A DNA stretch of 64,000 bases. Origin: Dendrobates tinctorius (lineage: Eukaryota). Numbering within the stretch: position 1 is the stretch's first letter; each line of letters starts with the position of its first letter. Shown here in pieces: positions 45,301-64,000 of this stretch. Below the pieces are notes generated by a model. It saw only the letters and a list, made by a program, of their open reading frames with translations. It was not told where the DNA came from and ran no database searches. The stretch is taken from NCBI RefSeq assembly GCF_039654945.1, contig NW_027361834.1, positions 3,968,001 through 4,032,000 on the forward strand, written 5' to 3'. The position numbers and the translations under genes are program-made.

Positions 45301-45329
45301 AATGTTCTTACCACCGACATTTGGTTTAA

Positions 45330-45443
45330 GTCCGGGATCACACATGCGAGAAACTCGGACGAATCTCGCATGTTAATACCCGGCATTGCTGCCTGCACTC
45401 GGGAGCGGAGCGTGCGGCTGCATAGCAATGTGTGATCCTGGCC
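45330..45443. mobile_element. Minimal PIF/Harbinger-type MITE (114 bp)
   Basis: TAA|GTCCGGGATCACACAT ... ATGTGTGATCCTGGCC|TAA. Confidence 0.75.
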
Positions 45444-46151
45444 TAATTTGAAAACTCCCACATCAGGTGTCTGACAGGTTCACTGCCAAGAGGGTTTCTG
45501 GGGATTCAAATCAGCAATAATTTCTTTAATGGGAAAAATAGGTATGCATTTATTTTTTGTATTTCTGAATACTCCATTTATTATCAACATTGTGAAGGTT
45601 TCTTTGTTTTTTTTTTTGTTGTTTGTGAAGTTGCCTTTTTCATATTTTACTTTATAAATAAAAATGACAGACCACAAGGCTGAAACAGTATAACATCATA
45701 TATTACATGTGGGTGCAGATGAAAAGAAAACCAACACAATCAGCCCATGGAAAATCAGTGTAGGACACACTGTAATCAATAAGAAGCCGCAAAAGGAAAT
45801 CAGTGCATAGATGTCCAAGGTATGATAAAATCACAAATCTTTATTAGATAACACAGGTAGAAAAGCACAAACAATGACAAACAAAGGGTGACACAAACAG
45901 AAGCAGAGCAAGAGGGCATACAGTGTCAAAAACCTCACTCTGACCCTTATCGTGAGTAAACACCTGGTGGTAAAGATAAATAAGTATCTAAGTATAAACA
46001 CCCAATATATAGCAGGCAGACCAGTGAAAAGCAGTAAGGGGTAAAATCCCCAGCTGGACAGCCATATAATCAGGGGTGAAGATACAAAGACACAAAAGCA
46101 AGGTACATACCAGGAGGGGAGAGGTGAGAGACACTGAATCCAAAGCTCAGC

Positions 46152-46203
46152 TGACCCCGACGTACGTTTCGGAAATGATCTTCCTTCCTCAGGGGGCGTG
46201 TCA
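46152..46203 (-). ncRNA. Type I hammerhead ribozyme in the PLE-C pLTR
   Basis: Reverse complement of 47795-47846. Confidence 0.85.
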
Positions 46204-47794
46204 ATAGGGTGTTAATTGCGGGTTAAATAGGGGAAGTAAAAACAAGCACCAATCATGAGGGGTGACGCTGACCAATCCCCCCACATCCCCCATCACTGCC
46301 TTAGCTGGCGCTGATCAGCACGGGGCCCCATGACGTCAGACGCCAGACCACAGGCAGACGGGGGCGGGACAGGAAGCGTGTCCACCCACACATGTACAGG
46401 AACAGGAAAGACGGCCGCCACCATCTTGGATATGGGCAAAAGGCAGGAAATCTGCCAGAACTGTGAAGGGGAATAGTGAACGTCCCTGAAAAGACCTTAC
46501 AAGATAGAAGCGGGCTGAATAGCGCTACAACTAATTTAGTACCCTAATATAACAATGTAGTAATGCATCACCAATGATATACAAATTAATTAATATATAG
46601 GGGAGCGCAAATAGGGCATTAGCAAGAAATGGAAATGTAAACTAAGTGTATAAATTACACCTAGGCAGCAAGAATAATCGGTAAGATGAGAGGCAGAGCA
46701 CATAATATTACAGAGTTAATAACAATAACCAGTGTTCAGTGCCCATACCTATCATATATAATCGAATACATGATTTTAAATACATAAAGCTCCACAAAAG
46801 CTGTATACGTGTCAATATATACATCAGTATACACATCCATAATATTGAGCCATAAAATACACCTATATATGGATACAGCAACATCATTAGTCCAGCATTC
46901 ATAATAATGAGATGGAGAAAAAAAAAAAAAGGACTAGGGCACCACCATATTCTCCATGAAAATGTGCCATAAATTAAACTTGCACATAAATACAGAGACA
47001 TTATTAAACCAACATTCATAGTATTGTGATGAAAAAAAGATGATGAGGCCTTGAAACCGCCAAATTCTCCATTCAAAATGTGCCATAGAGTAAACTGGCA
47101 CATAAATACAGAGGCATTATTAGTCCAGCATTCATAGTATTGCGATGAGGGAAAAATGAGGCCTTGAAACCGCCATATTCTCCATACAACAATGGAGGAG
47201 TAGATGTATCTTCATCTTCCCAAGTAGGATATCCATCCAACCCAGCAAGGAAAGCCACAAGAAAACCATCAGACAGGTGCCTGCAATTAAAACTAAAATA
47301 AAAACAAATGTTAAAACCAAAGACACAAAGAGTCACCCAACTGGCAGCAGCAGAAAAGGGGATAGAGAGGATAATCATAAAAATGGAGCAAATGACAGAC
47401 ACTCATTAAGACACCTCGGATGAACCGTTTGCAACTTCCAGATCCACCTGGTTTCCAATTGACCCAGCCTTTTAGATAGGCCCCCACCTCTGATATCTTT
47501 TCTCAGAGCCTCGATGCCACGCACTTTAAATAAAGATGCGTCACATTTATGATGATCTTTGAAGTGCTTGGGAATAGTTCTCAGGGTGGAGTCATCCATG
47601 TGGTCCCGTGCCGCCTGGATCCCCAACACATGCTCCCGCACACGGACCTTTAGTTGGCGTGTTGTAAGGCCAACATAAATAAGATCAGCGCCAGCTAAGG
47701 CAGTGATGGGGATGTGGGGGGATTGGTCAGCGTCACCCCTCATGATTGGTGCTTGTTTTTACTTCCCCTATTTAAACCGCAATTAACACCCTAT

Positions 47795-47846
47795 TGACAC
47801 GCCCCCTGAGGAAGGAAGATCATTTCCGAAACGTACGTCGGGGTCA
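47795..47846 (+). ncRNA. Type I hammerhead ribozyme (inverted pLTR copy)
   Basis: TGA-cacg-CCCC CTGAGGA a-GGAAG atca TTTCC GAAA CGTACG TC GGGG TCA; palindromic stem III ACGTACGT; predicted cleavage after 47839. Confidence 0.85.
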
Positions 47847-50800
47847 GCTGAGCTTTGGATTCAGTGTCTCTCCCCTCTCCCCTCCTGGTATGTACCTTGC
47901 TTTTGTGTCTTTGTATCTTCACCCCTGATTATATGGCTGTCCAGCTGGGGATTTTACCCCTTACTGCTTTTCATTGGTCTGCCTGCTATATATTGGGTGT
48001 TTATACTTGGATACTTATTTATCTTTACCACCAGGTGTTTACTCACGATATGGGTCAGAGTGAGGTTTTTGACACTGTATACCCTTTTGCTCTGTTTCTG
48101 TTTGTGTCACCCTTTGTTTGTCATTGTTTGTGCTTTTCTACCTGTGTTATCTAATAAAGATTTGTGATTTTATCATACCTTGGACATCTATGCACTGATT
48201 TCCTTTTGCGGCTTCATATTTTACTTTATGCAAATAAATTTTGGTTTGAATTCTTGCTGCAAGATGGTTTGTATTCTTGTGTTACCTGGCATTAAAATTC
48301 TGGTAATGTCTATTATAAAAATGTATCCCTATCGTATAGCTATCAATGTAGTGTTGGGAGTAAGCAATGCCACAGGAGATAGGGGTTGTGACAAGAGTTG
48401 AGCGAATTTTGCAAAATTTGGTTCGGATTACGATCGCCGGCGAATATTGTATTTACAGTATTCACCAAACGTCAATGGGTCTAGAGTTGAGCGAATATGT
48501 TCGGGACTGATCGTCAAACATAAATTCTGCACGAATAGAGTACAAAAAAGCCATGAATATGGCAAACTCGGATTTGAGGATGGTTTCATATTCTCCAGTT
48601 GTAAGGCTACACGAGATGGAAAAAGCTGACCATACACATTGGGTAGCCGTGTGCTGAATGTTCGGCCAAAGGCTATCACTCCCGACTCCACATACTTGTG
48701 AGTGCTGGGGATTTTGAGATTATCTCCCCTGAGAACAAAAGTATCAGACATTGCCGCTCCACCTGCCCGGTCCTTCTCTCTCCTATCGGGGAAGAGCCGG
48801 GAGGTGCCCCTACACATCAGATGGCCGAGCGATCCTCCCAAAATCTGTGGCTTTGACCGGCTTTCAACTAACATGTATTGGGGCTGTTATTCTGACTGTC
48901 CCAAAAAAGGTAATGGTAAACTGTACCTCCCTTCTAATGGGATGTTGTCCCTTTACCTCTATGTAGTCCACCTGTAATTGGCAAGTAACAGTTCGGTGCT
49001 CATATTCTGCTACATGTGTAAGCTATTAAAATGAGCCTTTATTAGATTTTAATAACTTCATTATTCACTATTTTGAAGTCTTTTGGGTCCTGATTTATTA
49101 AGCTGATTTCAGCAGAATTCTGGTGAAGTTGCGCAAAAATATTGCAACATTTGGAGTTTACTTTACAAGCCAGCTATGCCAATATGGACAGGGCATGGCT
49201 GCACCCACCTGCATAAAGAGTCTGACTGGGGTACATTGACGGCACCTGAATTGGGTGCACTCCAGCAATCCTCTTCTTAAACTGGCCTGCACAGCACAGT
49301 CTTAATGAATCGTGCCTTCTATTTCATTATTAAAAAAAAAAATTGTATATAATTATTTTTTTTTCCCCAAGCCAAATCTAACCACTATTATTTCAGTTGC
49401 CAATACTTGCAGCAGGTCTTTGAAACCAAAATCGGCCAAGATATAAAAGTACATGCGAATAATTGCACTATGCTGGACTATGGATACACAAACACTGTAT
49501 TTTTCCAGTTAATGATCTTCACTTGTAGGCTTTCCGTGAATGCTTTATATGTGTATCAATTTTTTTTATTAAAGTTGTGGATCATTTGAATCTTTTGTTT
49601 GTTGCAATGTAGCAACAAAACTGTTTGGGTATGACACTTGCGCACCGCAAATACTGCAGCCATAGGAGACTAGAGACGCACAGACCACAATCTCCTATAT
49701 TGTGTCTGCCTCAGCTGTGGACTGTGTATTCCCCATGGGGTGTCCAGTTCAACGCTGCGGGGGAGTCAGGTGCCATTTTATTGTAGTCCAGAACTGTGCT
49801 CTTCGCTACAATTTACACCCCAATATCAACAGTTCACGTAGCTGTCGGTGACAGGAGGTCTGCGCAGTGGTTGTGAGATGTGGTGAGCACAGATCAGGAG
49901 CCTGACGCTGTACTAATATCAGGCTATTGAGCAGCTCGGTGGCCTGGGATTAGTCGTACAATGTCAGCCTGCCGACCTGTACTCACTTCAGTATTCAGAG
50001 TTCATCATCACGTTGCTGTGCTCTGAACACTGACTCATCTCTGCTCAGTCAGTGTAAAGCCTCATTCAGATGTCCCTACATGATACATCTGAGTGAGGCT
50101 TTACACTGAGCACAGCCATGTATCTAGTCCCATCATGTGTGACGGTCTGCTGAGCCATGTATCTCATGCGGTCACTGAAACGGTGAGCAGCGCAGCTTCA
50201 ACTAACAGAATCGGTGCTAACGACCGACCTCTGTGTCACTGTCCACTTGTCAATATCACTTTGCCGCCACTAACAAAATGGCTCCTATGCTTCATCCTGC
50301 CTTATCCTTTGGCAAACATCTAGAAGGCGAGGAGTGACGTCTCACACATGGAGCAGATCCCACCAATGTGTACTGCAGTTGCACTATCTCACATTACATT
50401 AAATTTTTATGGCAAATATCAGCAGTTGCCCCCCACTCCCTCCAGTTTTTCAAGTTGAAAATATGAACAAAAATTGCTATTTTATACCATTAAAAAATAT
50501 ACGTTTTTACATTTTTTTTCCAATTGTTGAGAAAAAAATGGGCACATTCCCTTTAAATCTGCCAGATCCATTTATCATGTACTGTAGATTATAAAGGGAA
50601 TGTTGCTGATTAAATGTAGCCATTAAAATGAACTGTTATGCTCTGACTGGAACTAATTGTTCTGGCTCTGACCGCCGTGAAGCCTAAATGCCTGTAGGTC
50701 CACTCTGATTGTCACTCGGGATCAGGAAAAAACTTTATTTTTTTAATAAAGCCAATCGGTTCATGTTTTGTACTCCGTTAAGTGAATAAGGTAAAGCAAA

Positions 50801-50891
50801 GTTCTATGATCAACCTCCGACCCTTCCTTCTGATGTCTGCTCCTTCTGACATGGATATATTCTCAAGGTCCATACAAGAAGATGTCATAAC

Positions 50892-53800
50892 TAGTGTTGA
50901 GCATTCCGATACCGCAAGTATCGGGTATCGGCCGATACTTGCTGTATCGGAATTCCGATACCGACTTCCGATATTTTTTCAATATCGGAATTCGGCATCG
51001 GAATCGGAAGTTCAAAGTTGATTGACAGACTGACGTCATCATGATGCGCGGTGTGTGCGCATCATGATGCTCCGTCATTTCGGGCCTTCCGGGGGTCTCT
51101 GCCGGCCTGCCGGGGGGCTGTGCCGGCCTGCCGGGGGGCTGTGTGGACTGCCCGGGGTCTGTACCGGCCTGCCGGGGGGCTGTGCCGGCCTGCCGGTGGT
51201 CTGTGCACCCTGTGGGGGTCTGTACCGGCCTGCCGGGGGGCTGTGCCGGCCTGCCGGTGGTCTGTGCACCCTGTGGGGGTCTGTACCGGCCTGCCGGGGG
51301 GCTGTGCCGGCCTGCCGGGGGGCTGTGCTGATGTCCGGGGGTCTGTGCAAGCATTGTCCGATGGGACTACAAGTCCCATCGGGCGATGCCTGCTACCATG
51401 ACAGTGATTGACACATTAGCCAATGATGGGACAGTAGTAGTCCCATCATCCGGCTAATGTGTTAAATGTTAAAAAAAAAAAAAAATACTACATACATACT
51501 ACATACATACTACATGCTACATACATACTACATATATACTACATACATGCTACATACATGCTACATACATACTGCATGCTACATACATACTACATACATA
51601 CTACATACATACTACATGCATGCTACATACATACTACATGCATGCTACATACATACTACATGCATGCTACATGCATGCTACATACATACTACATGCTACA
51701 TACATACCACATACATACTACATACATACTACATACTACATATATACTACATGCATGCTACATACATACTACATGCTACATACATACCACATACATACTA
51801 CATACATGCTACATACTACATACATACTACATACATACTACATACATACTACATGCATGCTACATACATACTACATGCATGCTACATACATACTACATGC
51901 ATGCTACATACATACTACATGCTACATACATACCACATACATACTACATACATACTACATGCTACATACATACTACATATATACTACATGCATGCTACAT
52001 ACATACTACATGCTACATACATACCACATACATACTACATACATGCTACATACATACTACATATATACTACATGCATGCTACATACATACTACATATATA
52101 CTACATGCATGCTACATACATACTACATGCTACATGCATGCTACATACATACTACATACATACTACATGCTACATACATACCACATATATACTACATACA
52201 TACAATACATTCATACAATACATACATAGACATACAGTACATATAACATAGAGTAACATACTTACCAATACTTGTCACATTGTTCCCCGAAGCCATTGTC
52301 TTTTCCGGAATAAATATTAACATAACAAACCACAAAAATACTCACCCACGATCCGAAGCAGTCCACGAGTGTGTCCCACGACGATCTTGGGTAGAGAACT
52401 GCAGCATCAGATGATGCTGCCGTTCTCTACGGGCTGCAGGAATCCAATGACGGAAGGTAGGTATCCTTCCGCACTGTATTCCTCCGCCACTTGAAAAAAA
52501 AAAGTCCCTAGTCTCACTTTATGCCATTGCTGCGTGGGAAATTCCCACACAGCAATGGCATAAAGTGAGAATAGGGACTTTTTTTTTTTTTAAGTGGCGG
52601 AGGAATACAGTGCGGAAGGATACCTACCTTCCGTCATTGGATTCCTGCAGCCCGTAGAGAACGGCAGCATCAGCTGATGCTGCCGTTCTCTACCCAAGAT
52701 CGTCGTGGGACACACTCGTGGACTGCTTCGGATCGTGGGTGAGTATTTTTGTGGTTTGTTATGTTAATATTTATTCCGGAAAAGACAATGGCTTCGGGGA
52801 ACAATGTGACAAGTATTGGTAAGTATGTTACTCTATGTTATATGTACTGTATGTCTATGTATGTATTGTATGAATGTATTGTATGTATGTAGTATATATG
52901 TGGTATGTATGTAGCATGTAGTATGTATGTAGTATGTATGTAGCATGCATGTAGCATGTAGTATGTATGTAGCATGCATGTAGTATATATGTAGTATGTA
53001 TGTAGCATGCATGTAGTATATATGTAGTATGTATGTAGCATGTATGTAGTATGTATGTGGTATGTATGTAGCATGTAGTATGTATGTAGCATGCATGTAG
53101 TATATATGTAGTATGTATGTAGCATGTAGTATGTATGTAGTATGTATGTGGTATGTATGTAGCATGTAGTATGTATGTAGCATGCATGTAGTATGTATGT
53201 AGCATGCATGTAGTATGTATGTAGCATGCATGTAGTATGTATGTAGTATGTATGTAGTATGTAGCATGTATGTAGTATGTATGTGGTATGTATGTAGCAT
53301 GTAGTATGTATGTAGCATGCATGTAGTATATATGTAGTATGTAGCATGTAGTATGTATGTAGCATGCATGTAGTATATATGTAGTATGTAGCATGTAGTA
53401 TGTATGTAGCATGCATGTAGTATGTATGTAGCATGCATGTAGTATGTATGTGGTATGTATGTAGCATGTAGTATGTATGTAGCATGCATGTAGTATATAT
53501 GTGTTATGTATGTAGCATGTAGCATGCATGTAGCATGCATGTAGTATATATGTGTTATGTATGTAGCATGTAGCATGCATGTAGCATGCATGTAGTATGT
53601 ATGTAGTATGTATGTAGTATATATGTGGTATGTATGTAGCATGTAGTATGTATGTAGCATGCAGTATGTATGTAGCATGTAGTATATATGTAGCATGCAG
53701 CATGTATGTAGCATGCATGTAGTATATATGTAGTATGTATGTAGTATATATGTAGTATGTATGTTGCATGTAGTATTTATGTAGTATGAATGTAGCATGT

Positions 53801-53902
53801 ATGTAGTATGTAGTATGAATGTAGCATGTATGTAGCATGTATGTAGTATGTAGTATGAATGTAGCATGTATGTAGTATGCATGTTGTATGTATGTAGCAT
53901 GT

Positions 53903-53935
<33 letters not shown>

Positions 53936-54270
53936 TTTAACACATTAGCCGGATGATGGGACTACTACTGTCCCATCATTGGCTAATGTGTCAATCACTG
54001 TCATGGTAGCAGGCATCGCCCGATGGGACTTGTAGTCCCATCGGACGATGCCTGCACAGACCCCCGAAGCCTGCACAGCCCCCCGGCAGGCCGGCACAGC
54101 CCCCCGGCAGGCCGGCACAGCCCCCCGGAGCCTGCACAGCCCCCCGGCAGGCCGGCACTGCCCCCCGGCAGGCCGGCACAGCCCCCCGGCAGGCCGGCAC
54201 AGCCCACCAGAGCCTGCACAGACCACCGGCAGGCCGGCACAGCCCCCCGGCAGGCCGGCACAGACCACCT
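50892..54270. mobile_element. Foldback non-autonomous DNA element: ~3.1 kb palindrome with 21-bp GC-rich and TACA/TGTA satellites
   Basis: Left end TAGTGTTGAGCATTCCGATAC; arms mirror around GGGAAATTCCC at 52541; right TIR missing. Confidence 0.85.
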
Positions 54271-54349
54271 GAGTATTACAGAATACTGTAGATAAGCCCC
54301 TGATTGCGGTGGCCCCTGCTTATGGGGTGACAGATTCCCTTTAAATAAA

Positions 54350-54402
54350 CTACATACATATTCTAGAATACCCGATGCGTTAGAATCGGGCCACCATCTT
54401 GT
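54350..54402 (+). mobile_element. Helitron-type 3' end remnant
   Basis: CCCGATGCGTTAGAATCGGG hairpin followed by CCACCATCTTG|T (degenerate CTRR). Confidence 0.45.
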
Positions 54403-55418
54403 TGATTATAATGATGTAGATGGAGTCATTGTGTGCTCTATAGGTCATAATTTTTGGCCTCGTATGCCTTTTTGAGGCAGACACCAAGATGGCGTCTTGG
54501 TGCCTGCCTCAAATAGGCATATAATAATGCTAACATAGAACACTGACTCTGCCTGCATCATTATATTCAATGTTCCTGTTGGTGCGAACATCTGAATCCC
54601 ATTCTATGGGGCTTCAGACACAAATACCGACAGGGCCACTGATCATAGTCCAACGTGAACAGTCTGAGAGGCACGGCACCGTATAGGGAATGTGTGTCTG
54701 ACTGCAGAGCCCCCATAGATAGGTTAAGCTATAAAGGAACTTTGGGCAGTGCTTCCCCCCTCCCACTACTTCTCAGGTGATGCCATATATTAGAACGCCC
54801 ACTGACCAACGGGAGAAAGGGGAAGGGGCGTCCGGCCACACCCTCAGGGGTTAAATTCTTGTGCTGGGCCGGATAATTCCTCTTCCTCCCCTGGCTGACC
54901 ATTCGAAGTTTTGTCCCACCCTCCCTCCCTTATAAATTCGCAATTGTGCTGTGCGGCTATTGTATATAATGTTTATTTAAAAAAAAAAAAATTTTGGACT
55001 ATGTTTTCATTACTTACATGATTTTGTTGTATCCAATGTCACAGCGGTAGTATGGGGGGGCAAAGGTTCGTAACCTCTCATCAGCTTCCTTACCCACTGT
55101 CAGTTATGGGGGGTTTTCGGCTCTGAGTCTGTTGAGAATTTGTATTTGCCTCTCTCGGTTTAGAATTCAATAAACTTTGACCGACCTGTTCAACCCATCC
55201 AGGCCTTTTTGTTGTTTCGTTATTATGGGATTGGTGGGAGGCGGGGAGGCACCGTTTACGTCATACGGGTCTCTGCAGTCTAAGCAGGACTGTCTTAGGA
55301 TGCCCAAGTCCTACTAGTTAATGAATGTCTCTAGAACCTTTTATAAGGGAATAATTGTCATGGCTAGATGATGACAAGGTCACAACATCTCCCACATCGG
55401 CAAGTATGTAGTCAGTAA

Positions 55419-55553
55419 AGGGAAACCTGTCACCTCGTTTTTCAGCTATAAGCTGCGGCCACTGCCTTTCTACTGCATTCTAGAATGCTGTCGATAAGCC
55501 CTGAAAGGCAGTGGCCGCAGCTTATAGCTGAAAAACGAGGTAACAGGTTGCCT
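55419..55553. mobile_element. T2/Kolobok-type MITE
   Basis: AGGGAAACCTGTCACC..GGTAACAGGTTGCCT with ~50-bp near-perfect arms and degenerate TTAA flanks. Confidence 0.7.
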
Positions 55554-55689
55554 TTATCAATGTAAGCCTATGGAGCATCAGAACAAGGCCCCATAGGCTA
55601 GTATAATAGAAGAGACTTCTCGCTCACACCGAGAGCATAGAGTGAGCCGAAGAGTCTGGAGAGCGATGAAAGGCGATTCCGACAGCTAA

Positions 55690-55921
55690 ATAGGAAAGGG
55701 TTATTTACAGTTAGAGCAGTCACACTCTGGAATGCCGACCACAAGAACTAGTAATAGCAGACACTACAACAGCTTTTAAAAAGGGCTGGATGATTTCTTC
55801 AATACACATAACATTGTGGGTTATATTTAATTTAGTGACAAAATGGACAATTGGTGGAGAAAGGTTAAACTTGATGGACCTAAGTCTTTTTTCAACCTTT
55901 GTATGTAACTATGTATCTATG
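55690..55921 (+). mobile_element. CR1-type LINE 3' end
   Basis: Encodes F-T-V-R-A-V-T-L-W-N and F-K-K-G-L-D; ends with a (CTATG)-like tail. Confidence 0.7.
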
Positions 55922-56154
55922 ACATCACATAAAAGTGGAGCTGGACAGAGCTTGATCTCAGAGAAGACAGCAGTTGGGAAGTATATTACCCTACCACACT
56001 ACAGTACATACACGTTTAGTGAAAAAAACAAAACTTCATGAGGATTCTTCAAACATGTACGACGTACAATATTGGTATGCCATATATTTCAGAAATATTC
56101 TATTACAAAGGAATATTAATTAATTCAGAATTTTTATTTCATTTTTTTAAATTA

Positions 56155-56333
56155 GGAATTCCCTATCAGTATGTCTTTGGAGTGTGGGAGGAAACCGGAG
56201 TACCCGGAGGAAACCCACGCAAACACGGGGAGAACATACAAACTCCTTGCAGATGTTTTCCTTAGTGACATTTAAACCCAGGATCCCAGTGCTGCAAAAC
56301 AACAGTGCTAACCACTGAGCCCCCGTGCTGCCC
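56155..56333 (-). mobile_element. V-SINE (tRNA-derived head plus V domain) in the kinase 3' UTR
   Basis: Minus strand GGGCAGCACGGGGGCTCAGTGGTTAGCAC...GGAGTTTGTATGTTCTCCCCGTGTTTGCGTGGGTTTCCTCCGGGTACTCCGGTTTCCTCCCAC. Confidence 0.85.
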
Positions 56334-56381
56334 AAGTACAGCTTTGATGATGGACTTGCTGTAATAGATGTATATGGTGCC

Positions 56382-59300
56382 CTAAAGACAAATTGGACAA
56401 ATGCATCTTCTGATGCTGCGAGCGGCCCTGGATAATCCACGCCGACAGGATGATATAATCCGGCGGAAGATGGATCCTAGGAGAAGAGATATAAAACTAA
56501 TTTAAGTAATGGGACTCCGTATTAGAGGATACTGCTTTGGTGTCATTGTGGCAGGACGGTAGAGAAATCTTATCCGTGCAGAGGAACAGGATCATTGTCA
56601 CTCATCATACATGTGACAATCCCACCACTGACAGAAAACATCTCCACATGAATTATTCTCACTGGCCAACATCAAACAACATAGACCTTATTATCACACT
56701 TACGTCTTCTAGGTTCTCGCTCTTCTACTATTTTGGCATTTTGCTCTTCTACCAGTTTTATTGCAGAGTTATTTTTCTTCTCAACTAGAAATTCATATAA
56801 AAAGTGAAAAAACAAGTCAATGATCATTGTCAGTCATCATACATGTGACAATCGTACCCACTGGGAGTTAACATCTCCTCCTCGTGACTAATTCTTAATC
56901 GGCGACATCAGACAACATAGACCTTATTGTCACACTTACCACTGCTAGGTTCTGTCTCTGGGACTATTTCTGGGTCTTGATCTTCTCCCAGTCTTAGTGC
57001 AGATGTATTTATTGTCTCAACTGGAAATTCATGTAAAAAAGTAAGAAAAACAAGTCAATGATCATTGTTAGTCATAGATGTGAAAATCCCACCACTGACA
57101 TATAGCGATGAGCGAGTGTGCTCGTTACTGGAGTTTTCCGAGCATGCTCGGGTGTTCTCCACATGTATTCAGGTTCTCTAGCAGTCTCAAATCATGCAGC
57201 TGCGGGGACTAAAAGTTGATTTCCGAGCACGCCCAAACTACTCAGAGAACACCCGAGCATGTTCGGAAAACTCGAGTAAAGAGCACACTCACTTATCACT
57301 ACATATAATATATCCTCCTCATGAATTATTCTCAGTTGCCGACATCATACAACATAGACCTTATTGTCACACTTACCTCTGCTAGGCTCTGTCTCTGCAA
57401 CTATTTCTGGGTCTTGTTCTTCTCCCAGTTTTAATGCAGATGTATTATTGGCCTCAACTGGAAATTCATATATAAAAGTAAGAAAAACAAGTCAATGATT
57501 ATTGTCAGTCATAGATGTGAAAATCCCACCATTGACATATAGTGATGAGCGAGTGTGTTCGTTACTCGAGTTCTCCGAGCATTTTGAGGGTGCTCATGAA
57601 TTAAGTTTTAGTCCCCGCAGCTGCATGATTTGCAGCTTCTAGACAGCCTGAATACATGTGCGGATTGCCCGTTTTTTTGGAAATCCTCACATGAATTCAG
57701 GTTCTCTAGCAGTCTCAAATCATGCAGCTGCGGGGACTAAAGCTTGATTTCCGAGCACGCCGAAACTACTCAGAGAACACCCAAGCACGTTCAGAAAACT
57801 CGAGTAAAGAGCACATTCGCTTATCACTACATATAATATCTCCTCCTTGTGAATTATTCTCAATCGCCGACATCAGACCACATAGACCTTATTGTCACAC
57901 TTACGTCTGCTAGGCTCTGTCTCTGCCACTATTTCTGGGTCTTGCTCTTCTCCCAGTTTTAATGCAGATGTATTTTTTGCCTCAACTGGAAAATTATATA
58001 AAAAAGTAAGAAAAACAAGTCAATGATAATTGTCAGTCATAGATGTGAAAATCCCACCACTGACATATATAGCGATGAGCGAGTGTGCTCGTTACTGGAG
58101 TTTTCCGAGCATGCTCGGGTGTTCTCCACATGTATTCAGGTTCTCTAGCAGTCTCAAATCATGCAGCTGCGGGGACTAAAAGTTGATTTCCGAGCACGCC
58201 CAAACTACTCAGAGAACACACGAGCATGTTCGGAAAACTCGAGTAAAGAGCACACTCACTTATCACTACATATAATATATCCTCCTCATGAATTATTCTC
58301 AGTTGCCGACATCAGACAACATAGACCTTATTGTCACACTTACCTCTGCTAGGCTCTGTCTCTGCAACTATTTCTGGGTCTTGTTCTCCCAGTTTTAATG
58401 CAGATGTATTATTGGCCTCAACTGGAAATTCATATATAAAAGTAAGAAAAACAAGTCAATGATTATTGTCAGTCATAGATGTGAAAATCCCACCATTGAC
58501 ATATAGTGATGAGCGAGTGTGTTCGTTACTCGAGTTTTCCGAGCATTTTGAGGGTGCTCATGAATTAAGTTTTAGTCCCCGCAGCTGCATGATTTGCAGC
58601 TTCTAGGCAGCCTGAATAAATGTGGGGATTGCCCGTTTTTTTGGAAATCCTCACATAAATTCAGGTTCTCTAGCAGTCTCAAATCATGCAGCTGCGGGGA
58701 CTAAAGCTTGATTTCTGAGCACGCCGAAACTACTCAGAGAACACCCAAGCATGTTCAGAAAACTCGAGTAAAGAGCACATTCACTTATCACTACATATAA
58801 TATCTTCTCCTTGTGAATTATTCTCAATCGCCGACATCAGACCACATAGACCTTATTGTCACACTTACGTCTGCTAGGCTCTGTCTCTGCCACTATTTCT
58901 GGGTCTTGCTCTTCTCCCAGTTTTAATGCAGATGTATTTTTTGCCTCAACTGGAAAATTATATAAAAAAGTAAGAAAAACAAGTCAATGATAATTGTCAG
59001 TCATAGATGTGAAAATCCCACATTGACATATAATATATCCTCCTCCTCAATTATTCTCAGTCTCCGACATCAGACCACATAGACCTTATTGTCACACTTA
59101 CCTCTGCTAGGCTCTGTCTCTGCGACTATTTCTGGGTCTTGATCTTCTCCCAGTTTTAATGCAGAGGTATTTTTTGTCTCATCTTGAAATTCAGATAAAA
59201 AAGTAAGAAAAACAAGTCAGTGATCATTGTCAGTCATAGATGTGAAAATCCCACCATTGACATATAATATATCCTCCTCCTCAATTATTCTGTCTCCGAC

Positions 59301-62300
59301 ATTAGACAACATAGACCTTATTGTCACACTTACCTCTGCTAGGCTCTGTCTCTGCGACTATTTCAGGGTCTTGATCTTCTCCCAGTTTTAATGCAGAGGT
59401 ATTTTTTGTCTCATCTTGAAATTCATACAAAATAAGTAAGAAAAACAAGTCAGTGATCATTGTCAGTCATAGATGTGAAAATCCCACCATTGACATATAA
59501 TATATCCTGCTCGTGAATTATTCTGTCGCCGACATCAGACATCAAAAACCTTATTGTCACACTTACCTCTGCTCGGTTCTGTCTCTGGGACTATTTTTGG
59601 GTCTTCATCTTCTCCCAGTTTTAATGCAGATGTATTTATTGTCTCAACTGGAAATTCATGTAAAAAAGTAACATATAATATATCCTCCTTGTGAATTATT
59701 CTCAGTCGCTGACATCAGACCACATAGACATTATTGTCACACTTACCTCTGCTAGGTTCTGTCTTTACTACTATTTCTGGTTTTTGCTCTTCCAGTTTTA
59801 GTGCAGATGTATTTTTCATATGAACTGGAAAATCATACATAAAATGAAGAAAAACAGGTCAATGATAAACTCCTATAAGATTAGAGTCTTATCTTTATGG
59901 TTGCTGCTGCCGGATTGCTATGAGCGCAACCCTGTGGTCGGCGTTCATAGCACACCTATAATTCTGCTACATAGAGGTGATCTATGCATCTCTTCTATGT
60001 AGCAGAGACGATCGATTTATGGCAGTTTCTAGCCTCCCACGGAGGCTATTGAAGCATGCCAAAATAAAAAAATTGTTTTAAAAATATTAAAAAATGTAAA
60101 AAAACAAAAGTTTAAATCACCCCTCTTTCGCCCCATTCAAAATTAAACAATAAAAAAATCAAACCTACACATATTTGGTATTGCAGTGTTCAGAATCACC
60201 CGATCTATCAATAAAAAAAGGATTAACCCTATTGCTAAACGGCTGAGCGAGAGAACAAATCGAAACGCCATAATTAAGTTTTTTTTGCCACCGCAATATT
60301 GCATTAATATGAAATAACAAGCGATCAAAAGAACGCATCTGCATAAAAGTGTTATCATTAAAAACGTCAGCTCGGCGCGCAAAAACTAAATCCTCGCCCA
60401 ACCAGAGATCCCAAAAAGTGGAGACGCTACGGGTCTCAGAAAAGGGCGCAATTTATTTTTTTTTTTTTGCAAAGTCTGGAATTTTTTTTCACCACTTAGA
60501 TAAAAAAGAACCTAGACATGTTTGGTGTCTATGAACTCGTAATGACTTGTAGAATCAAAGTCACAGGTCAGTTTTAGCATTTAGTGAACCTAGCAAAAAA
60601 GCCAATCAAAAATTAAGTGTGGGATTGCATTTATTTTGCAATTTTACTGCACTTGGAATTTTTTATCCTGTTTTCTGTTACATGACATGGTAAAACCAAA
60701 GATATTGTTCAAAAGTACAACTCGTCCCACAAAAAATAAGCCCTCATACGGCAATATTGACCTAAAAATAAAAAACTTATGGCTCTGGAAAGAAGGGGAA
60801 AGAAAAACGAAAACGCAAAATCGAAAAAAAGATTCGGGCGTTAAGGGGTTAAAACATCTGTGGCACATTAAGGGTATATATAGGGTTAGTTTGGGGCCTG
60901 ATTGAGCCATGGGCAGAGTATTCGTGATCAGTATCAGGCACCAGACTGTATGGCCCCTTATACCTTTTAATGCGCAGCACATAAGAGTGAGAATTTTATA
61001 CAGTAAAGTGTTGGATTGTTGATTATTTTAAAGGCACAAAAAAGCAGTGATTTTCTGAGCCCTCATGTAACATTTACATTACACCTTATGATCAGTGGCG
61101 ACAACAAGATGTCCTATAGACCTGCACATACCTGGCAATATGGGAGAGGGTGACTTGTTGTTTTCAGTAGTGAAGCACTGATTATCACCATCATTTCCAG
61201 TTGGAGAAGATTCTTTCTGCCTGTTTAGTAGAAAAAAAAAATAAATTACATGTGAAAGCAATGAAAAATAAAAAGACTCCTTTTTTATGGGCAATTAGGA
61301 CACTTGGACAAAATGAAGGGTATACCTTGCACAGGACTGCCTTCTGTCAGCAAGAATGAAGAATAACTAGTAATAAAGGGCTTTAATGAAATGGAAATGA
61401 AAGGCTGGTCATAATGATCAACTGTTATCACCAGCGTTATCACAAGCCAGACATTACAGTGATGATCAATCATGGGGGCGGTGAGTTCTGGATTTAGTAT
61501 TGTGTCATATGCGTCTTGTATTTGGTATTCTGAAGATATGTCAGTACTATACCCTGTAATAATCTACTCACACGTCTGAGTGTTTTGTGCTGGTCTCTAG
61601 AGAGCTATCTGGAGATGCCTCATGATGTTCATCTCTCATCATCATGGTATTGGGGTCATATAGCTAAAATACACAGAGTAAAATTAATTATATATATATA
61701 GTATTTTCATACTATTATAGTTATAGTTTTGTGGATTTGCTGATCATATACATACCTTAGAAAGTCTTTGAGAAGATGATACATAGTTTAGACTTTCTGG
61801 CCAATCACTGACCTCCTCACTTGTGTCATCCTCATCTGAATCCATATGTTTGGGTCTCTCAATGCCAGCTACAAAGTACAAGTATTATCAAAGATTATTA
61901 ATATAATCACAGACAGTCACCAAGTTATTACTAATAATGATGGGAACATATTGTCACATAAAATGAAAGACAAGACAAATGGCAACTTTAACCAGATGAC
62001 GTCTCATTCTACTTACTGAGAAAGTAGCGGGTGTCCTCCTCTGACGTAATATCTGGCCTTAACGTTGGCATATTTTGAAGGTTCTCAAAGTCTAACTCAC
62101 TCAGGAATGGATGACTCTTGATTTCATTTGCTCCTCCTGGAAACGGAAGACAAGAAAAAAGTGATCCAGACAATGTTAGGAAGACTGTACATTTTAAGTT
62201 AATCTAAACTGAAGATATAGAAGATCCAAAATATACTGTAAGTCATGGCATGAAGAATGGGGAATGGACAAGACGATAACGCAGAGACCTCAGTGTTTAT

Positions 62301-63317
62301 CCTCATGGAAATGATCTATTTGTCAGGTCACAGAGGAGCTATAAGTCATTATTAATACTACTATATATATTACCTGTCCCGAGTCTATGTGTTGGATCTT
62401 TTATGAGTAGCTGAGTAATGATGCTTTGAGCTTTGGGATGAATAGCATGCTTTTTAAATTTCAAAGTGATGTCATCTGTTATGTAAAAAGTAAATATTAC
62501 AGAAAAGAAAGTCTCTACATTTACTATCATTTAAAAAAACTCATCAAAAGCAACAAGTAACTAAATCAAAGAATGAACATAGCAACTGAACCAAATTACT
62601 GTGGCATCACACAGCATCAGAATATTTTACTTACCTGTGGTGATACTGTTAAAAATAATACTTTTGTATCTTCCTTTAAATGGCACATCACCAGTAAGAA
62701 ATTTATACATGATGATCCCTAGTGACCACCAGTCAATAGGCCTTCCGTAGCGCTCCCCTAAGATGACTTCTGGGGCTATATAATGCAAGGTGCCAATCTT
62801 CTGAAAACCAACAGAACAATAAGAAGATGATCAATGAAAATAACTGTGACAAATAATATCAGTGGAAAAGTTTTCTATGTGAGAAAATATCAGAGAAGCA
62901 GAAATAGATCAGATCTGTAAAGAATAAGTTTTTTATGTATAGCTAACCCCATCATCAGGAAACTCTCTGGTGATGTCTTCAGTTTGAGCCTTGTAAATGT
63001 CTGATGTTGGTCTCATGAGTCCGAGTTTTGAAAGCCCAAAATCGGTGACTTTGATATGTCCAGTTGATGATATCATGAGGCTGTAAAAGAAAAGATATTG
63101 TCAGCCCTAAGTAATAACCCATAGACTGTATACCAAACTATAACTGTCTCCCTTTATTATACTGCAGCGTTCACTTACTTTCCAGGCTTCAGGTCTCGGT
63201 GAACCACACCATAGCTGTGCAGATATTCCACAGCAACAACCGTTTCTGCAAGGTACCTGCGGGCCCAGGCGAGGGATAAATGACCATATAACTTTAAGAG
63301 ACTGCCACAGTCTCCTC
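56382..63317 (-). CDS. Divergent MAST-family (AGC) Ser/Thr kinase, 3' portion of 19 exons; N-lobe lies beyond the window
   Basis: Exons 63179-63317 (HRDLKPGN), 62948-63080 (DFG), 62635-62800 (APE, DWWSLG), 62374-62475, 62017-62136 (EEDTRYF), 61756-61868, 61572-61663, 61132-61220, ten repeat exons in 56704-59824, last exon 56382-56476 ending TAG. All are AG/GT bounded, phase-compatible and stop-free (~617 codons). Kinase exon junctions match the MAST pattern as recalled. Confidence 0.88.
56600..59870 (-). repeat. Tandem array of ten exon+intron units (basic unit ~235 bp; four units enlarged by a MITE)
   Basis: Recurrent CACACTTAC-[78-81 nt]-CTG/CTT/CTA; higher-order ~965-bp duplication of 57021-57985 and 57986-58949. 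Confidence 0.95.
59880..60848 (+). mobile_element. piggyBac-type non-autonomous element, right part, in a kinase intron
   Basis: Ends TTAAGGGG|TTAA; homologous to 9200-9795. Confidence 0.65.
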
Positions 63318-64000
63318 CTAGAGCAGAAAGCAAATATGACAGGTGAGGGTTTGTTACAATGTAAGTTACACATGATGAGTGTGAATGAGAAATAAGCTGA
63401 GACATTGGGGCAGGGAGTCAATCATAGAGATACACTGTGTACTGTAGAGCGTATACTGTATACTGCAGAGTAATCCTATACAAAAAGAGAGCTGAGATCT
63501 GCCCCCTGCTGGTAAACTCTTACATTGCACTGTCAATCTCTGACAGCGGCATTTACAGCAGGTGACCTGGAGGCGAGCTGCTCTAAGCTCTCATCGCTCC
63601 CATTCCATGTCAGTGGTTTGCTATGGCTGCTGAGTGTCTGCGGAAGACTACTATCCTTGCCACTATGGTACTTCTGTGAAGGTCAGTGTGTAGCTTGGCT
63701 TCATAGTGGACCAAGATTTTTACCATATTCTGCAATGCCCATATTGCAGTACATAGTAATTACGATTATATAATCGCAAGTTCAGGTCCCTTATGGAGAC
63801 TAAAAAATAAAATAACAAAAATATTTGGGGAAAGAAAATTTTATATAAACATCACTTTTTCTCCATTCAAAATAAATAATAAAAAAACAAACTCAGATGG
63901 AATTGCAGTGTTTTTGTTGCCCCAACATCAGAAAAAAATGCAATAAGAAGCAATGAAAATTATTATCTGTCAGAAAGATGTAACCTTCCTAATCTGTTCT

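What the first reader, a model, noticed from the sequence alone, without database searches (positions are those of the whole stretch)
62635..63317. Charge reversal at substrate-specificity residues of an otherwise intact kinase
Seen: HRD, K, N, DFG, APE and DWW are intact, but the sequence reads [22 protein letters not shown] and FKGRYKSII. Established (recalled): MAST kinases have KPDN, GTPEY, YEFL and FGDTPEEL, and the acidic residues equivalent to PKA E170, E203 and E230 select basic substrates in AGC kinases. All three are replaced here (G, H, K). Inference: specificity has shifted away from basic motifs, possibly toward acidic sites such as the Ser/Thr in its own repeat tail.
Basis: partly seen in the sequence, partly recalled or inferred. 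Interest (0 to 1): 0.7.

Follow-up and report, generated by a model that had tools for sequence, protein, structure and literature searches.

The report
Frog MAST-like kinase, recharged substrate groove
This poison-frog gene is one copy of a large, fast-diversifying, frog-only family of MAST-type protein kinases that keep their catalytic residues but keep changing the residues that grip the substrate, so the charge reversal is real but is a trait of the whole family, not of this gene alone.

Summary
Three minus-strand exons (63317-63179, 63080-62948, 62800-62635) encode HRDLKPG|[21 protein letters not shown] and FKGRYKSII, with canonical splice sites.

Fifteen canonical MASTs invariably have D, E, E and D at the PKA E170, E203, E230 and D241 positions. 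The window has G, H, K and R. The P-3 determinant (E127 equivalent, Asp) is retained.

The gene is not a lone oddity. It belongs to a hyloid-frog expansion of short MAST-like kinases (DUF1908 plus kinase, no PDZ), with 138 surveyed gene models. Catalytic residues are near-invariant in these, while peptide-contact positions are hypervariable.

Among seven close paralogues:
- nonsynonymous divergence of the C-lobe exons is about twice intron divergence;
- seven contact codons chosen in advance show 21.5 nonsynonymous versus 0.5 synonymous changes.

The window copy has the most basic groove seen (+5; canonical -4). Its N-lobe exon lies just beyond the window end. The closest copies, which share the G/H/K groove, have intact Gly-loop, Lys and Glu exons.

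The "basophilic to acidophilic, own tail as substrate" reading is not supported: MASTs are not shown to be basophilic, and a groove-tail charge correlation vanishes in sister pairs.

An earlier scan note covers the repeat tail of this same gene in this window.

The parts
63179..63317 (-). Exon A: helix D, helix E and the catalytic loop (GGDC...HRDLKPG plus two bases of the Asn codon). The E127-equivalent Asp codon is 63312-63310; the G170 codon is 63183-63181.
   Evidence: acceptor tttctgctctag, donor gtaagtga; Pfam Pkinase E=6.5e-8; best PDB match Greatwall
62948..63080 (-). Exon B: completes Asn171, then strands 7-8, DFG, and the MAST-type activation-loop insertion ([28 protein letters not shown]), which has no phospho-acceptor before GT.
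   Evidence: the insertion and its TREF motif compared with Mast2 (PMC12732324) and KIN-4 (PMC11961639)
62635..62800 (-). Exon C: P+1 loop, APE, helix F and the F-G loop ([11 protein letters not shown]...DWW...MYKFL...[10 protein letters not shown]). Codons: K198 62800-62798, L202 62788-62786, H203 62785-62783, K230 62704-62702; FKGRYKSII spans 62680-62654.
   Evidence: (Pkinase E=1.9e-14)
62374..62475 (-). Exon D: end of helix G, the G-H loop and helix H ([34 protein letters not shown]). It holds the invariant R280-equivalent Arg. It has the highest pooled dN/dS of the six exons (1.99).
62017..62136 (-). Exon E: helix I and the start of the AGC tail with the turn-motif region ([12 protein letters not shown]...SEEDTRYF).
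61756..61868 (-). Exon F: acidic stretch and the MAST hydrophobic-like motif ([17 protein letters not shown]).
56385..61663 (-). Remaining downstream exons of the same gene: a Ser/Pro-rich linker, ten acidic repeat exons ([23 protein letters not shown]) and a basic Cys-rich terminal exon ([30 protein letters not shown]). All are open. There is no PDZ domain.
   Evidence: matches the tails of P0173, P0172 and P0060; earlier notes s1-389100 and s1-389356
63318..64000 (-). Intron upstream of exon A; no exon lies in these 683 bases. The N-lobe exon (strand 3 Lys, helix C Glu) is expected about 95-310 bases beyond position 64000. An intronic ATG ORF (63405-63175) is the start used by RefSeq models of two paralogues.

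Best explanation
The finding is the C-lobe of one recent copy of a hyloid-frog-specific, much expanded family of short MAST-derived AGC kinases: a DUF1908 helical domain, a kinase with the MAST-type phosphorylation-independent activation loop, an AGC tail, no PDZ, and here an acidic repeat tail with a basic Cys-rich end. The family keeps the catalytic machinery under purifying selection. Its peptide-binding face diversifies quickly among paralogues, faster than introns. That face comprises helix D, residue 170 of the catalytic loop, the distal activation loop and P+1 pocket, residue 230 of helix F, the F-G loop and helix G. The window copy carries one extreme state of this variable groove: G170, K198, L202, H203, I205, K230, K239, R241, K243. 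G170, H203 and K230 are shared with at least three sister copies and were not acquired on the window's own branch. Inferred mechanism, by homology with PKA: the enzyme is most likely an active Ser/Thr kinase. Its pockets for the P-2 and P-6 substrate residues no longer attract Arg and should repel it. Its P+1 pocket is remodelled. The P-3/ribose contact (Asp127 equivalent) is kept. The actual preferred motif is unknown. Shown: sequence, splice structure, family membership, conservation pattern, exon-versus-intron divergence. Inferred: catalytic activity, direction of the specificity change, adaptive cause.
For: Exons and motifs. Family: more than 130 RefSeq-type models named 'MAST1/2/3/4-like' in Ranitomeya variabilis, R. 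imitator, Dendrobates tinctorius, Phyllobates terribilis, Anomaloglossus, Engystomops and Rhinoderma. Pfam gives DUF1908 plus Pkinase without PDZ, whereas a canonical MAST has PDZ. In a tree the canonical MASTs form one tight clade and the frog genes form deep, long-branched clades; the window sits in a starred 4-row D. tinctorius clade. Conservation across 138 paralogues: G52, G55, K72, E91, HRD, K168, N171, DFG, APE, D220, W222 and R280 are each kept in at least 123 of the 138 models, and most departures are alignment gaps in partial models. The equivalents of E170, P202, E203, E230, F239, D241, Q242 and P243 carry 7-16 residue types, yet are invariant in 15 canonical MASTs; E203 ranks 3rd of 369 columns by entropy. 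The seven PKA contact sites taken from PMC1783638 are more variable than other kinase sites (p=0.004-0.006 in 7 paralogues, p=0.003 in 138). By element, the F-G loop with helix G and the G-H loop have entropy 2.2, against 0.4-0.8 for core elements. Selection: in 19 of 21 pairs, nonsynonymous divergence of exons A-D exceeds intron divergence at p<0.05, with p down to 1e-10, and dN/dS is 1.2-2.0 in most pairs. Intron and coding trees have the same topology, with coding branches about twice as long. Tree-based counts: exons C-D omega 1.5 (p=0.04); contact codons 21.5 nonsynonymous to 0.5 synonymous (p=0.014). Intactness: all nine loci examined have open exons A-F with canonical splice sites and complete upstream DUF1908, Gly-loop and N-lobe exons. 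The copies closest to the window (L008/L009/L010, 97% identical) share G/H/K and have ISSGGFG, AMKK and ERD. Expression hints: a 2.1-kb intronless Logan contig encodes family member P0113; run X1 holds 0.82 of the exon C words but only 0.19 of the exon-plus-intron stretch.
Against: The window's own N-lobe is outside the window and was not seen. No protein identical to the window's translation was among the hits listed by the protein searches, so this copy may be unannotated or treated as a pseudogene. On the window's terminal branch the changes are 14 nonsynonymous to 4 synonymous, which is what neutrality predicts. Versus its nearest copies, exon and intron divergence do not differ. Overall omega for exons A-F is 1.1 and not significantly above 1. 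The contact-codon test rests on 7 codons and 7 sequences. Exon dS also exceeds intron divergence, which is unexplained and could reflect intron homogenisation by gene conversion rather than faster exon change. No formal site model, recombination test, read mapping or enzyme assay could be run.
Confidence: 0.55

Rival explanations
1. Relaxed constraint only. After duplication the paralogues lost the canonical MAST substrates. The groove then drifts neutrally, while the catalytic core stays constrained for some generic or scaffolding role. The charge reversal has no adaptive or directional meaning.
For: Overall omega is near 1 (1.11 for exons A-F; 1.16 for non-contact kinase codons). Groove charge across the family is spread symmetrically around 0 (mean -0.4, sd 2.2), as drift would give. 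The window's terminal branch looks neutral.
Against: Neutral drift cannot push nonsynonymous divergence of whole exons, invariant motifs included, to about twice the intron divergence. It also does not predict 21.5 nonsynonymous to 0.5 synonymous changes at pre-specified contact codons.
Confidence: 0.2
2. This particular copy is a decaying or non-functional duplicate (a young pseudogene, or a copy lacking its N-lobe). The unusual residues would then be early decay.
For: The N-lobe is not visible in the window. No identical protein was among the hits listed by the protein searches. The terminal branch has 14 nonsynonymous to 4 synonymous changes. RefSeq models of two sister copies start at an intronic ATG and lack the N-lobe.
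Against: The frame is open through exons A-F and through the downstream open stretches that match the paralogues' tail exons, down to the stop; exons A-F have canonical splice sites. G170, H203 and K230 are shared with three sister copies that have complete upstream exons, so they predate this copy. The truncated RefSeq models are annotation choices, because the N-lobe exons are present upstream in those loci. A probable RNA run holds exon C but not the introns.
Confidence: 0.15
3. One reading: a directed switch from basophilic to acidophilic specificity, with the kinase's own acidic repeat tail as substrate or pseudosubstrate.
For: The window has the most basic groove of 134 sequences (+5 against -4 in canonical MASTs), and the tail is acidic with Ser/Thr in ETEPS and NTS contexts. 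Across 74 paralogues the raw correlation between groove charge and tail charge density is rho -0.46.
Against: The correlation disappears in independent sister pairs (6 opposite sign, 7 same sign). MASTs are not demonstrably basophilic (PMC12732324; the DSG target). The E127-equivalent Asp is retained. Sister copies with the same tail have E170 and E230.
Confidence: 0.1

Closest known systems
Canonical vertebrate MAST1-4 kinases
   Same: AGC kinase core with about 45-57% identity. The MAST-type activation-loop insertion with the TREF motif and no phospho-acceptor before GT. The SE(E/D)DT.YF turn-motif region and an SSS.R(L/F)SK hydrophobic-like motif. A DUF1908-type N-terminal region in paralogues.
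   Different: No PDZ domain and no long C-terminal region. Short proteins of about 600-900 residues. Only the C-terminal part of DUF1908 is matched. The groove residues D170, P202, E203, E230, F239, D241, T242 and P243, invariant in the 15 bird and fish sequences tabulated, are hypervariable here. In the tree (which also includes a shark) the branches are 10-50 times longer than those of canonical MASTs. The family has dozens of copies per genome instead of four.
MASTL / Greatwall
   Same: A MAST-lineage kinase without PDZ. It is the closest solved structure by sequence (8v5h, 5loh; E=2.5e-54 with P0354).
   Different: [quoted passage not shown] It keeps KPDN, GTPDY and FEFL. It is a single-copy, conserved gene.
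PKR, as an analogy only: a kinase whose substrate-docking surface evolves under positive selection
   Same: The catalytic core is conserved while substrate-contact surfaces change rapidly, and gene duplication occurs in some lineages (PMC11556786, PMC9683710).
   Different: PKR is an eIF2-alpha kinase, not an AGC kinase. Its driver (viral pseudosubstrates) is known, whereas no driver is known here. PKR has one to a few copies, not dozens.
PKA catalytic subunit, as the reference for residue roles
   Same: Same fold and the same numbering frame: E127 binds the P-3 Arg, E170 and E230 the P-2 Arg, E203 the P-6 Arg, and L198, P202 and L205 form the P+1 pocket (PMC1783638).
   Different: In the window, five of the seven positions differ in chemical character (G170, K198, L202, H203, K230). 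D127 and I205 are conservative replacements.

Membership tests
Eukaryotic protein kinase, AGC group | Catalytic loop HRDxKxxN, DFG, APE, DxW and the helix H-I Arg in the C-lobe | tested here: met
   HRDLKPGN, DFG, APE, DWW and HRLG are read directly. Pfam Pkinase matches exons A and C. The best PDB matches are all AGC kinases.
Eukaryotic protein kinase, AGC group | Gly-rich loop, strand 3 Lys and helix C Glu in the N-lobe | not testable with these tools
   The exon lies beyond position 64000. By synteny with L002, window position 64000 equals L002 9405 and the N-lobe exon is at L002 9096-9311. All nine paralogue loci, including the three closest with the same groove, have G.G..G, AMKK/AIKK and ERD.
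Eukaryotic protein kinase, AGC group | C-terminal AGC tail with a turn motif and a hydrophobic-type motif | tested here: met
   HPFL...SEEDTRYF...[11 protein letters not shown] aligns with the MAST tail SEDDTSYF...FSSCS.RFSKV and with the Greatwall tail.
MAST subfamily (MAST1-4) | Activation-loop insertion of about 15 residues with the (D/E)xxREF motif and no phospho-acceptor at APE-9 | tested here: met
   [32 protein letters not shown] aligns with SK(I/V)GLMSLTTNLYEGHIEKD(A/T)REFLDKQVCGT. The feature is described in PMC12732324 and PMC11961639.
MAST subfamily (MAST1-4) | N-terminal DUF1908 domain | not testable with these tools
   Outside the window. Present in paralogues: Pfam PF08926 in P0159 (E=9.6e-13, partial) and first exons in all nine loci.
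MAST subfamily (MAST1-4) | PDZ domain C-terminal to the kinase | tested here: not met
   The downstream exons in the window encode a linker, acidic repeats and a basic end. The frog paralogues have no PDZ Pfam hit, whereas the canonical P0244 does.
MAST subfamily (MAST1-4) | Invariant acidic groove residues (KPDN, GTPEY, YEFL, FFGD) | tested here: not met
   The window has KPGN, GTLHY, YKFL and FKGR. All 15 canonical sequences have D, E, E and D.
MASTL / Greatwall | Insertion of several hundred residues between DFG and APE | tested here: not met
   There are 39 residues between DFG and APE, the same length as in MAST1-4.
Pseudokinase | Loss of one or more of the catalytic Lys, HRD Asp, Asn171 or DFG Asp | tested here: inconclusive
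   The C-lobe residues are all present. The Lys is outside the window, although it is present in all nine paralogue loci examined.

The most novel reading that the evidence does not exclude
The frog MAST-like genes would be a vertebrate repertoire of active kinases whose substrate groove is under diversifying selection. The driver could be a genetic conflict, for example pathogen pseudosubstrates or germline/ampliconic conflict. It could also be balancing selection, if some 2-3% divergent copies such as the window and L002 are haplotypes rather than paralogues. Different copies would then phosphorylate different motifs. The window copy, with the most basic groove, would be the acid-preferring extreme.
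Probability: 0.25. Interest if true: 0.85.

Novelty: new variant of a known kind. Interest (0 to 1): 0.62.

Why it matters
MAST kinases are among the most conserved and least understood AGC kinases. Their substrates and specificity determinants are largely unknown (PMC12732324, PMC12024977).

This family is a natural experiment. Dozens of copies per frog genome hold the catalytic core and the MAST-specific activation loop fixed. They vary exactly the positions that read P-2, P-6 and P+1 in PKA, together with helix D and helix G.

If the copies are active, comparing a handful of them (for example the G/H/K type against the E/H/E type, which are 90% identical) would give a direct map from groove residues to peptide preference in the MAST lineage.

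It would also be a rare vertebrate case of an expanded kinase family evolving faster in exons than in introns. I found no paper describing the expansion; it exists only as automatic 'MAST3/4-like' annotation.

Tried and rejected
Those places were masked in my scripts and were not sent to any search tool afterwards.
2. A representatives search with exon C alone was dominated by multi-kinase-domain proteins. The useful hits had to be picked by identity.
3. Three encoding-contig look-ups (P0060, P0155, P0153) failed because only the longest isoform is on record. The codon set was therefore limited to 7 sequences, later 9 loci.
4. The only PKA-like protein in hand (P0092) is a gene model with duplicated segments. 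Index-based PKA numbering failed; the equivalences were read from the alignment blocks instead.
5. Groove charge versus tail acidity: the raw correlation was rejected after the sister-pair control.
6. The text of the kinome atlas (PMC9876800) does not mention MAST or MASTL.
7. Literature searches for the frog expansion and for run SRR5149392 found nothing.
8. Logan proteins P0241, P0298 and P0254, first taken as family transcripts, are canonical MASTs. Only the P0113 cluster belongs to the frog family.
9. Structure prediction and electrostatics were not run. The tools return no coordinates, and no full-length protein with the window's groove was available by reference.
10. A human MAST protein (P0321) appeared among the hits and was not used.

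Full report
**What is at the coordinates**

The interval 62635-63317 spans three coding exons of a minus-strand gene, with canonical AG acceptors, polypyrimidine tracts and GT donors.
- Exon A (63317-63179) ends in HRDLKPG plus two bases of a codon.
- Exon B (63080-62948) completes that codon as Asn and carries DFG.
- Exon C (62800-62635) reads [55 protein letters not shown].

Three more exons (D 62475-62374, E 62136-62017, F 61868-61756) continue the frame through helices G to I and an AGC tail. Together the six exons give an uninterrupted 257-residue fragment. Downstream open stretches encode a linker, ten acidic repeats and a basic Cys-rich end. These are the subject of earlier notes on this window.

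**Equivalence to PKA and MAST**

Alignment with a PKA-like sequence, two canonical MASTs and two frog relatives, and HMMER alignments to PKC theta and Greatwall chains, give these equivalences:
- window G = PKA E170
- window H = PKA E203
- window K (in YKF) = PKA E230
- window R (in FKGR) = PKA D241

In PKA, E127 binds the P-3 Arg, E170 and E230 bind the P-2 Arg, and E203 binds the P-6 Arg. L198, P202 and L205 form the P+1 pocket (PMC1783638).

Two points were missed. The E127-equivalent Asp is retained in the window, and in 123 of the 132 paralogues that have a residue there. The P+1 pocket positions are also changed (K198, L202, I205).

**What the gene is**

A search with exon C found proteins of 60-71% identity. 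They proved to be frog proteins with the same acidic repeat tail and the same basic C-terminal motif.

Searches with three of them listed well over a hundred distinct 90%-identity clusters. These are named automatically 'microtubule-associated serine/threonine-protein kinase 1/2/3/4-like'. They come from Ranitomeya variabilis, R. imitator, Dendrobates tinctorius, Phyllobates terribilis, Anomaloglossus baeobatrachus, Engystomops pustulosus and Rhinoderma darwinii. Real MASTs of other vertebrates appear only further down the lists.

Pfam finds a partial DUF1908 and Pkinase, with no PDZ, in a full-length member. A canonical MAST has DUF1908, Pkinase and PDZ. The closest solved structure by sequence is Greatwall.

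In a maximum-likelihood tree:
- canonical MASTs, from shark to mammals, form one tight clade with tiny branches;
- the frog genes form several deep clades with branches of 0.1-0.5;
- the window sits in a well-supported four-member D. tinctorius clade.

That agrees with the best matches. I found no paper on this expansion.

**Is the kinase otherwise intact?**

The window ends 683 bases upstream of exon A, and there is no exon in that stretch. The locus of the paralogue P0173 (L002) aligns with the window over 5 kb. Window position 64000 corresponds to L002 position 9405, and the N-lobe exon lies at L002 9096-9311. The window's own N-lobe exon should therefore start about 95 bases past the window end.

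All nine paralogue loci examined have the full set of upstream exons: the DUF1908 exon, linker exons, the Gly-loop exon, and the N-lobe exon with AMKK/AIKK and ERD.

The copies closest to the window are L008/L009 and L010. They are 97% identical in protein and 97.2% in DNA, and they share G170, H203 and K230. They carry ISSGGFG, AMKK and ERD.

Two RefSeq models (P0173, P0172) begin at an intronic ATG. That ATG is also present in the window (63405-63175). These models drop the N-lobe although its exons exist upstream, so this is an annotation artefact, not a truncation.

No protein identical to the window's translation was among the hits listed.

**Family-wide pattern**

I aligned 138 frog paralogues and 15 canonical MASTs.
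- G52, G55, K72, E91, H164, R165, D166, K168, N171, D184, G186, G200, T201, Y204, APE, D220, W222 and R280 are essentially invariant. Most departures are alignment gaps in partial gene models.
- The E170 equivalent carries 13 residue types (E 57, D 30, G 11, Q 11, K 6 and others).
- E203 carries 16 types (H 35, S 24, Y 22 and others).
- E230 carries 7 types (E 66, K 33, Q 19 and others).
- F239, D241 and P243 carry 11-15 types.

By entropy, E203 ranks 3rd, F239 9th, D241 10th and E170 39th of 369 columns.

The seven PKA contact sites, chosen from the literature before looking, are more variable than the other kinase sites:
- among seven close paralogues: 2.0 versus 0.70 minimal changes per site, permutation p=0.006;
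- among the 138: mean entropy 2.29 versus 1.10, p=0.003.

By structural element, the F-G loop with helix G and the G-H loop are the most variable (entropy 2.2). Helix D (1.56) and the distal activation loop with the P+1 loop (1.44) follow. Helix E, the catalytic loop, DFG and helix F are at 0.4-0.8.

**Selection**

I extracted exons A-F and their short introns from six paralogue loci and the window. All are open, with conserved splice sites.

Pairwise comparisons:
- In 19 of 21 pairs, the nonsynonymous divergence of exons A-D (0.06-0.18) exceeds intron divergence (0.02-0.08) at p<0.05, about twofold. Fisher p values go down to 1e-10.
- dN/dS is 1.2-2.0 in most pairs.

Pooled by exon, omega is 1.99 for D, 1.38 for C, 1.12 for A, 0.76 for B, 1.13 for E, 0.51 for F and 0.67 for the N-lobe exon.

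Intron and coding trees have the same topology, with coding branches about twice as long.

Counting changes on that tree:
- exons A-F: omega 1.11 (not significant);
- exons C-D: omega 1.5 (p=0.04);
- the seven contact codons: 21.5 nonsynonymous versus 0.5 synonymous changes (p=0.014);
- the remaining kinase codons: omega 1.16.

The contact codons also show repeated E/G and K/E toggling. This fits diversifying selection on the groove better than plain relaxation.

Caveats:
- Exon dS also exceeds intron divergence.
- Gene conversion was not modelled.
- The data set is small.
- The window's own terminal branch (14 nonsynonymous, 4 synonymous) is as neutrality predicts.
- The window's nearest copies differ from it by 1.7-1.9% in exons and 1.4% in introns, which is not a significant difference.

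**The charge argument**

I summed charges over eleven groove positions (170, 198, 199, 202, 203, 205, 230, 239, 241, 242, 243).
- Canonical MASTs are all -4.
- The frog family ranges from -5 to +4, with mean -0.4.
- The window is +5, the most basic of all.

The extra unit comes from K198, a change on the window's own branch.

In 13 informative sister pairs the signs are 6 against 7, so the correlation reflects shared ancestry.

The premise that MASTs are basophilic is also not established. [quoted passage not shown] MAST and Greatwall kinases phosphorylate the DSG motif of ENSA/ARPP19 (PMC11961639).

**Expression**

Those places were masked in scripts and not sent to any search tool afterwards. 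Only indirect hints remain.
- A cluster of intronless Logan contigs encodes family member P0113, closest to a Rhinoderma gene.
- Run X1 is a small contig set, guessed to be RNA. It holds 0.82 of the sampled words of exon C but only 0.19 of the exon-plus-intron stretch 61700-63330. This suggests transcripts of this copy or a near-identical one.

**Verdict**

The interesting unit is the family, not this copy. It is a large frog-specific expansion in which the catalytic core is fixed and the peptide-binding face is the fastest-changing part of the gene. The window copy is the basic extreme of that continuum. Catalytic activity, the actual motif and the cause of the diversification remain inferences.

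Noticed in passing
window 51459-53943: ORFs of 200-360 codons on both strands (HTTYILH-type peptides) are produced by a tandem repeat arranged as an inverted duplication. The same region matches paralogue locus L004 in both orientations. It is almost certainly non-coding satellite downstream of the kinase gene, and it is conserved next to paralogues.
   Followed up: partly
window 63175-63405; L002 and L003 near 10001: RefSeq models P0173 and P0172 start at an intronic ATG ([11 protein letters not shown]...). This yields N-lobe-less 'kinases' although the N-lobe exons lie about 780 bases upstream. The same intronic ORF exists in the window.
   Followed up: yes
L002 4523-4759 and 6069-6263; also L003, L004, L006, L008, L010: The first (DUF1908) coding exon is present as two tandem copies about 1.5 kb apart in most paralogue loci. 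In L002, my 76-codon extraction that extends the proximal copy 42 bases upstream of its match contains two stop codons.
   Followed up: no
window 44208-64000 versus L002 9405-25817: Homology between the window and the P0173 locus extends at least 20 kb beyond the gene, at 95-98% identity and interrupted by insertions. The duplication unit is therefore large, or the two are divergent haplotypes. L002, L009 and L010 lie on one 603-kb contig carrying consecutive gene models, which indicates a tandem array.
   Followed up: partly
exons A-F versus introns, seven loci: Synonymous divergence in the exons (about 0.09-0.14) is higher than intron divergence (about 0.05-0.08) in most pairs. This is unexplained. 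One possibility is that introns are homogenised by gene conversion while exon diversity is retained, as described for MHC genes.
   Followed up: no
window 14112-16788, 22804-26078, 28041-33512, 39775-41235: Long ORFs of transposable elements: reverse transcriptase/endonuclease-type, Ty3-like pol, LINE-like ORF2, and a transposase-like protein. They fill most of the window outside the kinase gene.
   Followed up: no
P0046 (Ranitomeya imitator): This gene model fuses a transposase-like N-terminus, a family kinase C-lobe with repeat tail, and retrotransposon pol pieces. It is a chimeric annotation.
   Followed up: no
same genome, other windows: Earlier notes list ampliconic arrays of SBK1-like kinases and a frog-specific PKC-like kinase in this genome. 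The MAST-like expansion may be one of several kinase amplifications in this frog.
   Followed up: no
They lie in an intron between tail exons.
   Followed up: no
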